Positions 7,760 to 16,462 of a stretch of 64,000 nt of DNA are shown in pieces. The stretch covers positions 186,001 to 250,000 of the forward strand of contig NIVC01000162.1 in the NCBI GenBank assembly GCA_002269645.1, written 5' to 3'. Position numbers and translations under genes: made by a program. The notes under the pieces are model-generated. The model ran no database searches and was not told where the DNA came from. It worked only from the letters and a program-made list of their open reading frames with translations. How positions within the stretch are numbered: position 1 is the first letter of the stretch; every line of letters begins with the position of its first letter. This DNA comes from Macrostomum lignano. Its lineage: Eukaryota.

Positions 7760-8188
7760 TCAGCTGCAGGTGCCGCAGGACTTTCTACAGTGCTTGTCAG
7801 CAATGTGGGGGAACTGGCAGTAGAGAGCGCCAGCCCAGTGCTGACAGTCAGAGTCCTTGTCTGTGCATTCGACGTGCTGCTGCTTGTCCGAGGCTGACTC
7901 AACAACAGTGCTAGAAGCTGTTGCCATGGCTTCGGTTGCCATTGCTACAGTGTTGGTTGTGGTTGTTATGGTAACCGTGTCAGTAGATTCCGCGACAGGG
8001 GCTCTGACTTTCGGAGGGGCAAGGTAGATTTGCGATGCCGCCGGGTTCTCGGAGTTGCACCTGTCGCAGGCCAGCGGGCAGTGCGGCCATTTTTCTTCGC
8101 AGAGGCCGTTGGCAGCAAAGAATCTGCAGTAGCGATGGCTGTCTTTGCACGGCTGTCGCTTCGCTGGAGACGGCTGCGGCTGCCTGCG
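7760..8188 (-). CDS. Terminal exon: two ShKT domains with a Thr-rich linker
   Basis: CKDSHRYCRFFAANGLCEEKWPHCPLACDRC and CTDKDSDCQHWAGALYCQFPHIADKHCRKSCGTC; acceptor cacag| at 8189. Confidence 0.9.
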   Translation of the reverse strand, partial: RRQPQPSPAKRQPCKDSHRYCRFFAANGLCEEKWPHCPLACDRCNSENPAASQIYLAPPKVRAPVAESTDTVTITTTTNTVAMATEAMATASSTVVESASDKQQHVECTDKDSDCQHWAGALYCQFPHIADKHCRKSCGTCS

Positions 8189-14100: not shown

Positions 14101-16462
14101 CTCGCCGCCGCCCAGTGGTTGTTTGATCTCGCCACCGCCCAGTGGTTGTTTGATCTCGCCGCCGCCGCCGCCCAGTGGTTGTTTGATCTCGCCACCGCCC
14201 AGTGGTTGTTTGATCTCGCCGCCGCCCAGCAGTTGTTTTATCTCGCCGCCACTTTTTTGGAATTTTGGATTGAGGACCGAAAAAAGGGCCAAAATAGTAA
14301 TATATAAAGATTTGCCACGATATTTTCCATAATGTGATTTTCTGACTGAATCTCACCTTACAGTAACATTGGTCTTGTTTCTGCTGTTAATTAATGAATT
14401 TTTTAGACGTTTTAAAATTGTCTGGTTGGCTAACGGTACATTCAGCATGTAGTCATTGATGTTGGTGACGATGTAGGCTCGAATCTGCGGGAGTTCCGGT
14501 GTCACTGTGTCAGGGTGTCACTGTGTCAGGGTGTCACTGTGTCAGGGTGTCACTGTGTCAGGGTGTCACTGTGTCAGGGTGTCACTGTGTCAGGGTGTCA
14601 CTGTGTCAGGGTGTCACTGTGTCAGGGTGTCACTGTGTCAGGGTGTCACTGTGTCAGGGTGTCACTGTGTCAGGGTGTCACTGTGTCAGGGTGTCACTGT
14701 GTCAGGGTGTCACTGTGTCAGGGTGTCACTGTGTCAGGGTGTCACTGTGTCAGGGTGTCACTGTGTCAGGGTGTCACTGTGTCAGGGTGTCACTGTGTCA
14801 GGGTGTCACTGTGTCAGGGTGTCACTGTGTCAGGGTGTCACTGTGTCAGGGTGTCACTGTGTCAGGGTGTCACTGTGTCAGGGTGTCACTGTGTCAGGGT
14901 GTCACTGTGTCAGGGTGTCACTGTGTCAGGGTGTCACTGTGTCAGGGTGTCACTGTGTCAGGGTGTCACTGTGTCAGGGTGTCACTGTGTCAGGGTGTCA
15001 GCATCAATCTGCGTCTTGCCATCGCTCACACCATCGCCAATCAGAGTGACAGCGGCCCAGCCCTGCTCCTTCGTCCCCGCATCCACGGTGCCGATGTACA
15101 GGCGGCCCCGCAGCGGCTCCCAGAGGTCGTCACGGTCCGCTCCCCGCAGCCGGTTCTCCAAGATGGCGCCATCCGATGCTCGCCGAAGCTCCGCTGGTAG
15201 CAGCTCCGGCAGCAGGAAGCGGTTCAGTCTGGTTGCCAGGCGCCACTGCTGGCTGAACGCCGCGAATTCCACAGCCAGCTGGTCACCGCTGCTCCCATTG
15301 AATTTCAGAGTCACCGAGGTACTCGCGCTGACTTCCGGCGCGTGGAACAGACGCACGTCCCCTGTCGCAGCACCAGTGAATAAAGCTCTCGGATTCCAGC
15401 ATCAGCAGAGCCTCACTACTTCATTCTGTCCAGCACTCTCCCATCTCCCTCTCTCCCATCTCCCTCTCTCCCATCTCCCTCTCTCCTATCTCCCTCTCTC
15501 CCATCTCCCTCTCTCCCATCTCCCTCTCTCCCATCTCCCTCTCTCCCATCCCCCTCTCTCCCATCTCCCTCTCTCCCATCTCCCTCTCTCCCATCTCCCT
15601 CTCTCCCATCTCCCTCTCTCCCATCTCCCCCTCTCTCCCATCTCCCTCTCTCTCCCATCTCCCTCTCTCCCAACTCCCTCTCTCCCATCTCCCTCTCTCC
15701 CATCTCCCTCTCTCCCATCTCCCTCTCTCTCCCATCTCCCTCTCTCCCATCTCCCTCTCACTCCCATCTCCCTCTCACTCCCATCTCCCTCTCTCTCCCA
15801 TCTCTCTCCCATCTCCCTCTAGCTCCCATCTCCCTCTCTCTCTCCCATCTCCCTCTCTCCCGTCTCCCTCTCTCTCCCATCTACCTCTCTCCCTATATCC
15901 CGTCTCCCTCTCTCCCGTCTCCCTCTCTCTCCCATCTACCTCTCTCCCAACTCCCTCTCCCCCATCTCCCTCTCTCCCATCTCCCTCTCTCCCATCTCCC
16001 TCTCTCTCCCATCTCCCTCTCTCTCCCATCTCTCTCTCCCATCTCCCTCTAGCTCCCATCTCCCTCTCTCTCTCCCATCTCCCTCTCTCCCGTCTCCCTC
16101 TCTCTCCCATCTACCTCTCTCCCTATATCCCGTCTCCCTCTCTCCCGTCTCCCTCTCTCCCATCTCCCTCTCTCCCATCTCCCTCTCTCTCCCATCTCCC
16201 TCTCTCCCATCTCCCTCTCACTCCCATCTCCCTCTCACTCCCGTCTCCCTCTCTCTCATCTCTCTCTCTAATCTACCTTACCAGTCTCCAATATCTAATC
16301 TTCACTGCACCACTCACACAGGATAAACAGAGTCTTAGAGAAGGTCTGATTCTCCAGGACACGAACTGCCGATCCCTCAGCGGCAGATGAGACGGTGCAG
16401 ATCGCAGAGCCGTGCAATAATAATACTTGCACTCGAAGCAAAAGCCGAAAAAATCGAAGCAT
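7760..16462 (-). CDS. Secreted reprolysin/ADAMTS-like (M12B) metalloprotease with 3 ShKT domains; 12 exons: 16462-16318, 15361-15030, 14484-14362, 13434-13327, 13113-13033, 12800-12699, 12611-12535, 12287-12135, 12003-11875, 11621-11401, 10411-10257, 8188-7760 (about 684 aa)
   Basis: All introns are GT-AG with matching phases. Order: signal peptide; prodomain; LYAEFSVIID; WYLHPSLG; FIKFC...PDFVLILTG; GLGGVAFPSEAC; AHEIGHLIGMPDD; Met-turn SGLMRY; WSTCAV...CL; three 6-Cys ShKT repeats. The boundaries of exons 3, 4, 10 and 11 are less certain. Confidence 0.85.
8270..8450. repeat. Diverged about 11-bp GGGAATCCCAY-type repeats
   Basis: Recurrent GGGAATCCC/GGGACTCCC quasi-palindromic units. Confidence 0.7.
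8639..8930 (+). repeat. LTR (292 bp) of the truncated Gypsy element
   Basis: Perfect 7-bp terminal inverted repeats (TG...CA), immediately followed by the PBS. Confidence 0.75.
8949..10250 (+). pseudogene. Degenerate gag-protease of the truncated Gypsy element
   Basis: Gag is frameshifted near 9250. The slippery site G GGA AAC at 9412-9418 links gag to the -1 frame pol ORF (9397 onward) carrying the DTG aspartic protease motif. Confidence 0.8.
10257..10411 (-). CDS. Exon 11 of the metalloprotease gene: ShKT domain
   Basis: CFDKARYCDEWKMAGDCDTAHRADCRRTCGLC; donor AAG|gtgagc at 10256. Confidence 0.9.
11075..11365. repeat. About 95-bp tandem repeat, about 3 copies
   Basis: GCTCCGATTGGCTGGCGCCC recurs near 11133, 11228 and 11323. 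Confidence 0.85.
11875..13434 (-). CDS. Catalytic-domain exons 4-9 of the M12B metalloprotease
   Basis: HEIGHL|IGMPDD is split by a phase-2 intron (tt|gtgagt...ccgcag|g). The Met-turn is GLMRY. Confidence 0.88.
12301..12500. repeat. (TCTG)n microsatellite
   Basis: Directly visible. Confidence 0.99.
12833..13012. repeat. (GTA)n followed by (CTA)n microsatellite
   Basis: Directly visible; source of the poly-V/poly-L ORF. Confidence 0.98.
13460..14250. repeat. About 27-bp minisatellite GATCTC(GCC)nCAGTGGTTGTTT with a variable internal GCC tract
   Basis: Directly visible. Confidence 0.96.
14362..16462 (-). CDS. Exons 1-3 of the metalloprotease gene: signal peptide and prodomain
   Basis: MLRFFRLLLRVQVLLLHGSAICTVSSA signal-like segment; prodomain-like RLYIGTV...WAAVTLIGDG; phases consistent. 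Confidence 0.75.
14499..15000. repeat. Perfect 16-bp minisatellite (GTGTCACTGTGTCAGG)n, about 31 copies
   Basis: Directly visible. Confidence 0.99.
15435..16270. repeat. 15-bp polypyrimidine minisatellite (CTCTCCCATCTCCCT)n
   Basis: Directly visible; fills most of intron 1. Confidence 0.96.

What the first reader, a model, noticed from the sequence alone, without database searches (positions are those of the whole stretch)
7760..16462. Hidden 12-exon ADAMTS-like metalloprotease ending in three ShK toxin domains
Seen: twelve small exons scattered among satellites and a retroelement join with matching phases into signal peptide + prodomain + ADAMTS-type catalytic domain (HPSLG, FC..., GVA...C, HEIGH, Met-turn, WS.C) + a Pro/Trp-rich linker + 3 ShKT. 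The ORF track misses nearly all of it. Known: ADAMTS catalytic domains are normally followed by disintegrin-like/TSP1 modules, while ShKT is typically fused to astacins, tyrosinases or MMP23. Inference: M12B-ShKT3 is an uncommon architecture, possibly a secreted predation, defence or mucus effector with a K+-channel-modulating or substrate-binding tail.
Basis: partly seen in the sequence, partly recalled or inferred. Interest (0 to 1): 0.8.

Follow-up and report, generated by a model that had tools for sequence, protein, structure and literature searches.

The report
Flatworm ADAMTS-like protease with lectin and ShK tail

Summary
There is a real gene on the minus strand at 16462-7760. The organism is Macrostomum lignano. 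Two public, RNA-seq-derived GenBank proteins (BOX15_Mlig001002g2, BOX15_Mlig000675g2) match my model at every junction.

The correct model has 15 exons and 1073 aa, not 12 exons and 684 aa.

- **Architecture:** signal peptide, M12B-type propeptide, Gly-rich repeat, ADAMTS-type catalytic domain, F-type-lectin-like domain, three ShKT domains.
- **Catalytic domain:** a family profile hits ADAMTS-1 (5e-12) and ADAMTS-5 (2.5e-10) best. The third zinc ligand is Asp (HEIGHLIGMPDD), invariant across relatives, as in ADAMDEC-1 and snapalysin.
- **Relatives:** the same propeptide-protease-lectin-ShK design occurs in three "uncharacterized" nemertean proteins, with 2 to about 6 ShKT domains (Tubulanus, Lineus).
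- **Selection and expression:** the three M. lignano copies show more synonymous than non-synonymous changes. Expression is low and not specific to testis, ovary or tail.

My verdict is a new variant of a known kind. The gene is already annotated but uncharacterised, and its interest is moderate.

The parts
16318..16462 (-). Exon 1: start codon, signal peptide (about aa 1-27, predicted cleavage after VSSA) and the start of the propeptide.
   Evidence: Matches P0001 residue for residue. Aligns with the signal peptides of the nemertean orthologs. The GT donor is at 16317.
15030..15361 (-). Exon 2: propeptide core (M12B-propeptide-like beta-rich domain).
   Evidence: Alignment A1. The orthologs P0004 and P0006 hit Pfam Pep_M12B_propep above cutoff. 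AF2 pLDDT is 70-88 in this part.
14357..14484 (-). Exon 3: end of the conserved propeptide (YIVTNINDYMLN...). The donor is AG|GTGAGA at 14357.
Evidence: The junction NVTV|SGGEIKQ appears in P0001 and P0002.
13455..14251 (-). Exon 4, 5' part: 25 in-frame copies of (G)nEIKQPL. This is the '27-nt satellite' and forms a linker between the propeptide and the catalytic domain.
   Evidence: TRF array 13476-14226. It is translated in the public transcript-derived proteins, with about 6 units in P0001 and about 30 in P0002.
13327..13454 (-). Exon 4, 3' part: linker with the dibasic PKR site, then the first strand of the catalytic domain (ELYAEFSVIIDQ).
   Evidence: The nemertean orthologs carry RxKR sites close to this position.
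13033..13113 (-). Exon 5: catalytic domain.
12699..12800 (-). Exon 6: catalytic domain (QVWYLHPSLGY motif, conserved in the family).
12535..12611 (-). Exon 7: catalytic domain (FC...W motif).
12135..12287 (-). Exon 8: catalytic domain, including GGVAFPSEAC and the HEIGH zinc-binding helix.
11875..12003 (-). Exon 9: LIGMPDDY (Asp as third zinc ligand plus an invariant Tyr), Met-turn CYSGLM, and WSTC.
   Evidence: D, Y, C, G, M, W and C are invariant in 10 sequences. Aligns to the ADAMTS-1 MPHD motif and to snapalysin PDHY.
11401..11621 (-). Exon 10: end of the catalytic domain, a Pro-rich hinge, and the first strands of the F-type-lectin-like domain (NTAWRAPAWQSST...WGAWKATDG).
10905..11039 (-).
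   Evidence: Present in P0001 and P0002. Aligns to FBP32 (3cqo).
10741..10824 (-).
10485..10610 (-).
10257..10411 (-). Exon 14: ShKT domain 1 (aa 893-924).
   Evidence: Pfam ShK. Six-Cys spacing 6/8/7/3/2.
8189..10256 (-). Intron 14, carrying an antisense fragment of an LTR retroelement: a gag-like ORF at 8859-9275 and an aspartyl-protease ORF at 9397-10356, both on the + strand.
   Evidence: Pfam gag-asp_proteas 8.7e-11. Present in all three genomic copies.
7760..8188 (-). Exon 15: ShKT domain 2 (aa 945-975), a Thr/Ala-rich linker, ShKT domain 3 (aa 1039-1072) and the stop codon.
   Evidence: Pfam ShK..

Best explanation
This is an intact, expressed Macrostomum lignano gene of 15 exons and 1073 aa in this copy. 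It encodes a secreted zymogen of a small spiralian subfamily of ADAMTS-type (M12B) metzincins.

Domain order:
- signal peptide
- M12B-type propeptide
- a lineage-specific, copy-number-variable (G)nEIKQPL spacer
- a dibasic processing site
- a catalytic domain with HExxHxxGxxD, an invariant Tyr and a Met-turn
- an F-type-lectin-like beta-sandwich
- three ShKT domains

Inferred mechanism:
- The propeptide and the repeat spacer are removed by a proprotein convertase-type cleavage.
- The mature enzyme is an extracellular endopeptidase. Its zinc is held by two His and one Asp, as in ADAMDEC-1 and snapalysin.
- Substrate or matrix targeting comes from the lectin-like and ShKT modules, not from the disintegrin-like/TSR/spacer modules of true ADAMTSs.

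What is shown: the gene structure, the domain identities, conservation across two phyla, purifying selection, and transcription.

What is inferred: secretion, processing, catalytic activity and the targeting role of the tail.
For: - **Gene model:** it is identical at all junctions to the RNA-seq-derived GenBank proteins P0001 and P0002. The annotation method is described in PMC5730564.
- **Catalytic domain:** Pfam Reprolysin is above cutoff. The profile-versus-PDB search gives ADAMTS-1 at 4.9e-12 and ADAMTS-5 at 2.5e-10 as best hits (with the ADAMTS-like relatives added, 1.8e-18). Foldseek gives ADAMTS-5 at 3.6e-7, TM 0.60-0.62.
- **Lectin-like domain:** FBP32 at 1.9e-7, Foldseek 1k12 at 1.9e-7, and Pfam PF22633 above cutoff in all three nemertean orthologs.
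- **ShKT:** three stretches found.
- **Family:** an exhaustive HMMER search finds the same architecture in Tubulanus polymorphus (two proteins) and Lineus longissimus (E 1.9e-94 to 6.5e-83).
- **Active site:** His, Glu and His of HExxH are invariant in the six full-length relatives. The Asp, Tyr and Met-turn Met are invariant in all ten aligned sequences.
- **Precedent for the Asp ligand:** ADAMDEC-1 carries HEXXHXXGXXD within M12B (PMC4885070).
- **Purifying selection:** synonymous against non-synonymous codon differences are 11/6 and 7/2 between copies. Exon divergence is 0.6-0.9% against 1.7-2.1% plus many indels in introns.
- **Expression:** 70-122 reads per body fragment, classed 'Non-Specific' (PMC7336406 Table S8).
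Against: - No activity data exist.
- The Asp ligand may dampen or abolish proteolysis.
- The Mlig propeptide has no Cys (no cysteine switch), gives no Pfam propeptide hit, and its cleavage site is PKR, not RxKR.
- The AF2 model is weak (mean pLDDT 52), and is below 50 exactly around the zinc-site C-terminal subdomain.
- The canonical fucose-binding triad of F-lectins is not kept: it is Q/R/H where the lectins have H/R/R.
- Inclusion of the repeat in the mature mRNA rests on the public annotation. I could not map reads myself. The repeat is open in all three frames of this strand, so ORF openness alone proves nothing.
Confidence: 0.7

Rival explanations
1. The protein is a catalytically dead or strongly dampened pseudo-protease. 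Its real function would be binding. The lectin-like and ShKT modules, perhaps released as ShKT peptides at the RLKR site between ShKT1 and ShKT2, would act as matrix or mucus components, inhibitors or channel modulators.
For: - The third zinc ligand is Asp, not His.
- The Mlig propeptide has no cysteine switch.
- An RLKR furin-type motif lies at aa 929-932.
- ShKT domains occur in non-toxin mucus proteins (PMC7333891).
Against: - HExxH with the catalytic Glu, the Met-turn Met and the Asp-x-Tyr are invariant from flatworm to nemertean. That pattern is expected for an active site kept under selection.
- Asp as third ligand occurs in snapalysin, a solved zinc endoprotease (1c7k). It is also the putative zinc site of ADAMDEC-1, which is predicted to be secreted as a soluble proteinase (PMC4885070).
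- The RLKR site is not conserved in the nemertean orthologs.
- No Lys-Tyr dyad is present in the ShKT domains.
Confidence: 0.2
2. The first reader's 12-exon, 684-aa product (M12B, linker, ShKT3, without the lectin-like exons and without the repeat) is a genuine alternative isoform.
For: - Skipping exons 11-13 is phase-compatible, since exon 10 ends and exon 14 starts in phase 1.
- The alternative pair of donor 14362 (GTAAGG) and acceptor 13434 (CAG) is also in frame.
Against: - Both public transcript-derived proteins, and the fragment P0003, contain exons 11-13 and the repeat.
- Skipping would cut an F-lectin-like fold in half, leaving only its first strands.
- All nemertean orthologs keep the complete domain.
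Confidence: 0.07
3. The locus is a decaying duplicate (pseudogene) in a repeat-rich, recently duplicated genome, and the apparent gene is an annotation artefact.
For: - The locus is riddled with tandem arrays and two retroelement insertions.
- One public model is 5'-truncated and the other is marked partial.
Against: - All 15 exons are intact, with canonical splice sites, in all three copies. This includes exons 1-3 of the 'truncated' copy.
- There are no frameshifts or stop codons.
- Synonymous changes outnumber non-synonymous ones.
- Transcripts are detected.
Confidence: 0.03

Closest known systems
ADAMTS proteases (M12B; solved catalytic domains of ADAMTS-1, -4 and -5)
   Same: - The catalytic domain is most similar in sequence profile and predicted fold.
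- It has 8 Cys in the catalytic domain, an M12B-type propeptide, basic processing sites in the orthologs, and a secreted, non-membrane design.
   Different: - No disintegrin-like, TSR, Cys-rich or spacer modules were detected.
- The third zinc ligand is Asp, not His.
- The tail is an F-lectin-like domain plus ShKT domains.
Nemertean 'uncharacterized proteins' XP_074652005.1 and XP_074653277.1 (Tubulanus polymorphus) and XP_064643968.1 (Lineus longissimus)
   Same: - Same domain order: signal peptide, propeptide, HExxHxxGxxD catalytic domain, F-lectin-like domain, ShKT repeats.
- 33-37% identity over most of the length.
- These are the true family members.
   Different: - They have no Gly-rich EIKQPL repeat.
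- They keep two propeptide Cys and RxKR sites.
- They have 2 to about 6 ShKT domains.
- They keep the two Arg of the F-lectin motif.
Nemertean 'ADAMTS-12-like / ADAMTS-6-like' proteins (XP_064633949.1, XP_074648479.1)
   Same: They share the same HExxHxxGxxD-x-Y zinc site, the Met-turn and the Q.WY..P.LGY motif.
   Different: They carry TSP1, ADAMTS Cys-rich and spacer modules in place of the F-lectin-like and ShKT domains.
ADAMDEC-1 (decysin-1)
   Same: It is an M12B member with HEXXHXXGXXD, predicted to be secreted as a soluble proteinase, with truncated ancillary domains (PMC4885070).
   Different: - It is a vertebrate ADAM-clade protein with a short disintegrin-like domain.
- It has no lectin or ShKT domains.
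- No orthology was tested; the Asp is probably an independent change.
Snapalysin (M7; PDB 1c7k, 4hx3)
   Same: The local zinc-site signature is similar: HE.GH..G.PD.Y.G..SEL.
   Different: - It is a 130-aa bacterial single-domain enzyme.
- The match covers only about 35 residues, and Pfam M7 is below cutoff (20.5 against 25).
- The rest of the domain is adamalysin/ADAMTS-like.
MMP23 and the astacin-ShKT proteins of nematodes, cnidarians and molluscs
   Same: They are metzincin proteases with C-terminal ShKT domain(s). An astacin-ShKT protein occurs in limpet pedal mucus (PMC7333891).
   Different: They belong to different catalytic families (M10, M12A) and have no F-lectin-like domain.

Membership tests
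M12B adamalysin/reprolysin (incl. ADAMTS) catalytic domain | Significant match to the Reprolysin family model and to solved M12B structures | tested here: met
   Pfam PF01421 scores 29.8 bits against a cutoff of 20.8. The family profile hits ADAMTS-1 at 4.9e-12 and snake-venom metalloproteinases at 7.5e-8. Foldseek hits ADAMTS-5 at 3.6e-7 (the model has low to medium confidence).
M12B adamalysin/reprolysin (incl. ADAMTS) catalytic domain | Zinc-binding consensus HExxHxxGxxHD with His as the third ligand | tested here: not met
   The sequence is HEIGHLIGMPDD. Asp aligns with the third His of ADAMTS-1 (MPHD). The Asp is invariant in all ten aligned relatives.
M12B adamalysin/reprolysin (incl. 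ADAMTS) catalytic domain | Met-turn downstream of the zinc site | tested here: met
   An invariant Met sits in C-x-x-G-[LIM]-M (M489 of P0001).
M12B adamalysin/reprolysin (incl. ADAMTS) catalytic domain | M12B propeptide with a cysteine switch | tested here: inconclusive
   The Mlig propeptide gives no Pfam hit and has no Cys after the signal peptide. It does align along its length with the nemertean propeptides, which hit Pep_M12B_propep above cutoff.
ADAMTS (sensu stricto) | Ancillary region: disintegrin-like domain, central thrombospondin type-1 repeat, Cys-rich domain and spacer | tested here: not met
   The Mlig protein gives no TSP_1, ADAMTS_CR or spacer hit at E<=1. The region after the catalytic domain is F-lectin-like. 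These modules were detected in the nemertean ADAMTS-like relatives by the same kind of scan.
ShKT (ShK toxin-like) domain | Six-Cys pattern and a Pfam ShK match | tested here: met
   Three stretches are found, 7.8e-10 overall. Cys spacings are 6/8/7/3/2, 6/8/6/3/2 and 6/8/9/3/2.
ShKT (ShK toxin-like) domain | Lys-Tyr functional dyad of K+-channel-blocking ShK/BgK toxins | tested here: not met
   The Cys3-Cys4 segments are DTAHRAD, EEKWPH and QFPHIADKH, with no K-Y (sequence). The role of the dyad comes from established knowledge and PMC7333891.
F-type lectin (fucolectin / FTP) domain | Sequence and fold similarity to solved F-type lectins | tested here: met
   phmmer gives FBP32 (3cqo) at 1.9e-7 and AAA (1k12) at 2e-3. 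Foldseek gives 1k12 at 1.9e-7 with TM 0.67, plus lectinolysin and SpX modules. Pfam PF22633 is only 0.044 in Mlig but is above cutoff in the orthologs.
F-type lectin (fucolectin / FTP) domain | Fucose-binding motif: His, then Arg-x-Asp-x4-Arg/Lys | tested here: not met
   In the alignment to FBP32, SCTHT corresponds to SCSQT (His to Gln) and NRGDCCPER corresponds to GREECCEHH (first Arg kept, second Arg to His). The nemertean orthologs also lack the His but keep both Arg.
Snapalysin (M7) | Match to the whole M7 domain | tested here: not met
   Pfam Peptidase_M7 scores 20.5 bits, below the cutoff of 25, and covers only profile positions 74-107. PDB 1c7k is matched over about 35 residues only.

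The most novel reading that the evidence does not exclude
Spiralians (at least macrostomid flatworms and nemerteans) possess a previously undescribed ADAMTS-derived protease subfamily. In it the TSR/spacer exosite region was exchanged for an F-lectin-like domain plus ShKT repeats, and the third zinc ligand is fixed as Asp. That change is known within M12B only from ADAMDEC-1. The enzyme would be an active secreted protease, for example of mucus or epidermal/gland secretions, with glycan- or ShKT-directed substrate targeting and possibly altered sensitivity to TIMP-type inhibitors.
Probability: 0.45. Interest if true: 0.55.

Novelty: new variant of a known kind. Interest (0 to 1): 0.4.

Why it matters
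- **A natural experiment in protease targeting.** ADAMTS-type catalytic domains are thought to depend on their TSR, Cys-rich and spacer exosites for substrate choice. Here a conserved lineage has replaced that whole region with a lectin-like fold and ShKT domains.
- **An evolutionarily fixed Asp zinc ligand in an M12B protease outside vertebrate ADAMDEC-1.** This allows a comparative test of what the His-to-Asp change does to activity and to inhibitor escape.
- **A caution for annotation.** In repeat-rich genomes such as M. lignano, an array that looks like a satellite can be coding. A phase-compatible exon chain built by eye can also skip real exons and misname half a domain as a 'linker'.
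- **Limits.** The gene is already in public databases, its expression is low and not organ-specific, and no function is known. The finding is a lead, not a discovery.

Tried and rejected
- **Word-indexed protein searches.** The searches with the 802-aa draft, with the catalytic+lectin segment and with a family alignment returned only M. lignano fragments. Distant relatives came only from the exhaustive HMMER search.
- P0001 was used in its place.
- **Pfam on the Mlig propeptide.** No hit.
- **Pfam on the Mlig lectin-like region.** Only 0.044 to PF22633. The identification rests on PDB sequence and fold matches and on the orthologs.
- **ORF openness of the repeat as evidence for coding.** Rejected. 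All three frames of this strand are open across the array, and every unit length is a multiple of three.
- **Snapalysin (M7) membership.** Rejected. The resemblance is confined to the zinc site.
- **Literature.** Searches for the gene ids, for Macrostomum with ShK/ADAMTS/metalloprotease, and for F-type lectin with ShK/reprolysin found no description of this protein or architecture. Supplements of two other M. lignano papers did not contain the gene.
- **LTR search.** The search around the upstream retroelement found only the flanking 15-nt satellite.
- **AF2 model.** It was too weak (mean pLDDT 52) to examine zinc-site geometry.

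
Full report
**What is in the sequence**

I read the minus strand of 7500-16800 and its three-frame translation, and chained open segments through GT-AG sites. A first 15-exon chain, with the 27-nt array treated as intron, gave 792-802 aa depending on the exon-4 acceptor.

The variant with exon 4 starting at 13434 gives 799 aa. Exon 10 ends in phase 1 and exon 14 starts in phase 1, so that skip is phase-compatible. Its two quoted ShKT exons (10411-10257, 8188-7760) are exact.

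**Identity of the organism and the public annotation**

A protein search found two near-identical GenBank proteins of the free-living flatworm Macrostomum lignano:
- BOX15_Mlig001002g2 (P0001, 895 aa, partial)
- BOX15_Mlig000675g2 (P0002, 919 aa), which UniRef names "ShKT domain-containing protein"

The GenBank annotation of assembly Mlig_3_7 derives from a genome-guided transcriptome built with StringTie and TACO on RNA-seq plus a de novo assembly (PMC5730564). The junctions of these proteins are therefore RNA-derived.

Aligning them to my model showed two things. They contain my exons 11-13. They also read straight through the 27-nt tandem array as coding sequence. In them, exon 3 ends at 14357 (donor AG|GTGAGA), a 105-nt intron follows, and exon 4 runs from 14251 to 13327.

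The corrected model has 15 exons, a 3222-nt CDS and 1073 aa, and agrees with the public proteins at every junction. Exons (minus strand, high to low coordinate): 16462-16318, 15361-15030, 14484-14357, 14251-13327, 13113-13033, 12800-12699, 12611-12535, 12287-12135, 12003-11875, 11621-11401, 11039-10905, 10824-10741, 10610-10485, 10411-10257, 8188-7760.

The array encodes 25 units of (G)nEIKQPL in this copy. P0001 has about 6 and P0002 about 30. ORF openness is not evidence that the array is coding, because all three frames of this strand are open across it. The evidence is the transcript-derived annotation.

**Three genomic copies, all intact**

The window is collinear with two loci of GCA_002269645.1, at roughly 94-98% identity outside the tandem arrays. 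This fits the known redundancy of that assembly (PMC5730564).
- All 15 exons and their splice sites are intact in all three copies. That includes exons 1-3 of the copy whose annotation is 5'-truncated.
- Exons differ by 0.6-0.9% with no frame-breaking indel. Introns differ by 1.7-2.1% plus many indels.
- Over 670 non-repeat codons there are 11 synonymous against 6 non-synonymous differences (L001), and 7 against 2 (L002). This indicates purifying selection.
- The antisense retroelement fragment in intron 14 (aspartyl-protease ORF, Pfam 8.7e-11) is shared by all copies.

**Domains**

- **ShK and Reprolysin.** Pfam on the draft product gives ShK (3 stretches, 7.8e-10) and Reprolysin PF01421 (29.8 bits, cutoff 20.8). 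There is also a sub-threshold Peptidase_M7 match confined to the zinc site.
- **Middle region.** A PDB sequence search shows it to be an F-type-lectin-like domain: FBP32 (3cqo) at 1.9e-7 and eel agglutinin (1k12) at 2e-3. The three skipped exons encode the rest.
- **Fucose-binding residues.** In the FBP32 alignment the fucose-binding His and the second Arg are replaced (Q/R/H where the lectins have H/R/R). Canonical fucose binding is therefore not expected.
- **Catalytic domain.** A profile of the four lectin/ShK-type family members hits ADAMTS-1 (4.9e-12) and ADAMTS-5 (2.5e-10) first, then snake-venom metalloproteinases (7.5e-8), then snapalysin (2.4e-5, zinc site only). Adding two ADAMTS-like relatives raises ADAMTS-1 to 1.8e-18.
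- **Predicted structure.** An AlphaFold2 model built on a 10-sequence alignment is weak overall (mean pLDDT 52; the propeptide, the N-terminal catalytic subdomain and the lectin-like domain reach about 60-88). Foldseek nevertheless returns F-type lectins (1k12 at 1.9e-7, TM 0.67) and ADAMTS-5/-1/-4 (from 3.6e-7, TM about 0.6) as best matches.
- **What is absent.** No TSP1, disintegrin-like, Cys-rich or spacer module is detected.

**The zinc site**

The motif is HEIGHLIGMPDDY. In the alignments to ADAMTS-1 the Asp occupies the position of the third zinc-binding His (MPHD).

The Asp, the Tyr two residues later, the Met of C-x-x-G-L-M (the Met-turn) and W..C are invariant in all ten aligned relatives. 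The His, Glu and His of HExxH are invariant in the six full-length ones.

Asp as third ligand is the hallmark of snapalysin. Within M12B it is known from ADAMDEC-1 (PMC4885070).

**Relatives**

The exhaustive HMMER search of 1.84 billion representatives with P0001 gave 141 hits.
- Only three full-length proteins share the whole architecture: XP_074652005.1 and XP_074653277.1 (Tubulanus polymorphus) and XP_064643968.1 (Lineus longissimus). All are nemertean, all are named "uncharacterized protein", and E-values run from 1.9e-94 to 6.5e-83.
- Pfam on them gives Pep_M12B_propep, Reprolysin, F5_F8_type_C_2 and ShK.
- They carry RxKR sites at the propeptide/catalytic boundary and two propeptide Cys that the flatworm protein lacks. 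The flatworm has PKR there.
- The flatworm's Gly-rich repeat is inserted in the poorly conserved linker after the propeptide core. It would leave with the propeptide if cleavage occurs at PKR. This explains why the copy number can vary from 6 to about 30.
- Two nemertean proteins that NCBI names ADAMTS-12-like and ADAMTS-6-like share the same Asp-type zinc site but carry TSP1, Cys-rich and spacer modules. This suggests that the lectin/ShK form arose from an Asp-type ADAMTS-like ancestor by exchange of the ancillary region (inference).
- A metagenome-derived protein (P0106) combines a reprolysin domain (1.4e-24) with two ShKT domains and no lectin-like domain. M12B+ShKT therefore exists elsewhere too.
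- Several short environmental fragments carry the same zinc-site signature.

**Expression**

In the re-analysed positional RNA-seq of Brand et al. 2020 (PMC7336406, Table S8), Mlig000675.g2 has 122/70/81/79 reads in the head-only fragment and the successively longer fragments. Its class is 0,0,0 "Non-Specific", and it is not significantly affected by social environment. The gene is therefore transcribed at a low to moderate level and is present already in the head fragment. It is not testis-, ovary- or tail-specific. No paper I could search describes the gene or the architecture.

**How it most likely works**

- **Shown:** an intact, transcribed, selectively constrained gene for a protein with the domain order given above.
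- **Inferred from the M12B family and the conserved residues:** it is secreted as a zymogen. A proprotein convertase-type cleavage removes the propeptide and the repeat spacer. The mature enzyme is a zinc endopeptidase with a His-His-Asp site. The lectin-like and ShKT modules take the place of the ADAMTS exosite region in directing it to substrates or matrix.
- **Main rival (about 0.2):** a dampened or dead protease acting through its binding modules.
- **K+-channel idea:** nothing in the sequence supports it. No ShKT domain has the Lys-Tyr dyad. ShKT domains without the dyad occur in ordinary mucus proteins (PMC7333891).

**Verdict**

The gene, the catalytic motifs, the ShKT exons, the intronic arrays and the retroelement are right. 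The exon count, the product length, the "linker" and one "satellite" are wrong.

The ADAMTS-type catalytic domain, the absence of TSR modules and the three ShKT domains hold. The interpretation missed the F-lectin-like domain, the Asp zinc ligand and the coding repeat. It also missed that the gene is already annotated, and that the architecture is conserved in nemerteans.

I rate it a new variant of a known kind, with interest 0.4.

Noticed in passing
window 17320-22030 (ORF 17623-21657, + strand): A roughly 4.7-kb insertion sits inside a 15-nt satellite, whose flanks are 17063-17320 and 22031-22476. It carries one uninterrupted 1344-aa gag-protease-RT-RNaseH-integrase ORF of Ty3/gypsy type. 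It lies about 0.9 kb upstream of the metalloprotease ATG and is absent at this position from the two public copies of the locus. It is therefore a young or polymorphic insertion near the promoter. No LTR pair of 80 nt or more was found.
   Followed up: partly
window 8859-10356 (+ strand), inside intron 14: This is an antisense fragment of another LTR retroelement, with a gag-like ORF and a retropepsin ORF (gag-asp_proteas 8.7e-11). It lacks RT and integrase. It is shared by all three genomic copies, so it is older than their divergence.
   Followed up: yes
window 13455-14251 compared with L001 and L002: The coding (G)nEIKQPL array varies from about 6 to about 30 units between the three copies of the gene in one inbred line. 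This is a coding minisatellite in a propeptide linker.
   Followed up: partly
window 1 to about 3100 (minus strand): The downstream neighbour in both public loci is a 370-aa Gly_transf_sug (PF04488) glycosyltransferase gene. By collinearity it lies at the start of the window and runs off its edge.
   Followed up: no
window 3419-5613: A 33-nt tandem array of 66 copies at 96% identity lies between the two genes. It has a 751-aa open frame on the minus strand. I did not check whether it is coding, as the 27-nt array is.
   Followed up: no
window 32127-37885, 43065-46461 and 52107-60166: Several large tandem arrays are present: 12-nt GTAGAGATTGGA, a TTGA-type array, a 42-nt unit, GATA, and a 238/377-nt satellite spanning about 8 kb. 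Strong GC skew coincides with the first two regions. Roughly a third of the window is tandem repeat, in line with the repeat content reported for M. lignano.
   Followed up: no
protein aa 929-932 (RLKR), spanning the exon 14/15 junction (window 10257 / 8188): A furin-type R-x-K-R motif is created across the splice junction between ShKT1 and ShKT2. It is present in all three copies (the residue after it is Gly, not Arg, in P0002: RLKRG against RLKRR). It is not conserved in the nemertean orthologs.
   Followed up: partly
P0079 and P0083 (nemertean proteins, not in the window): NCBI-named ADAMTS-12-like and ADAMTS-6-like proteins of Lineus and Tubulanus also have Asp where the third zinc-binding His would be. 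They appear to go from the catalytic domain straight into TSP1, with no disintegrin-like domain. This may be an undescribed Asp-type ADAMTS-like clade.
   Followed up: partly
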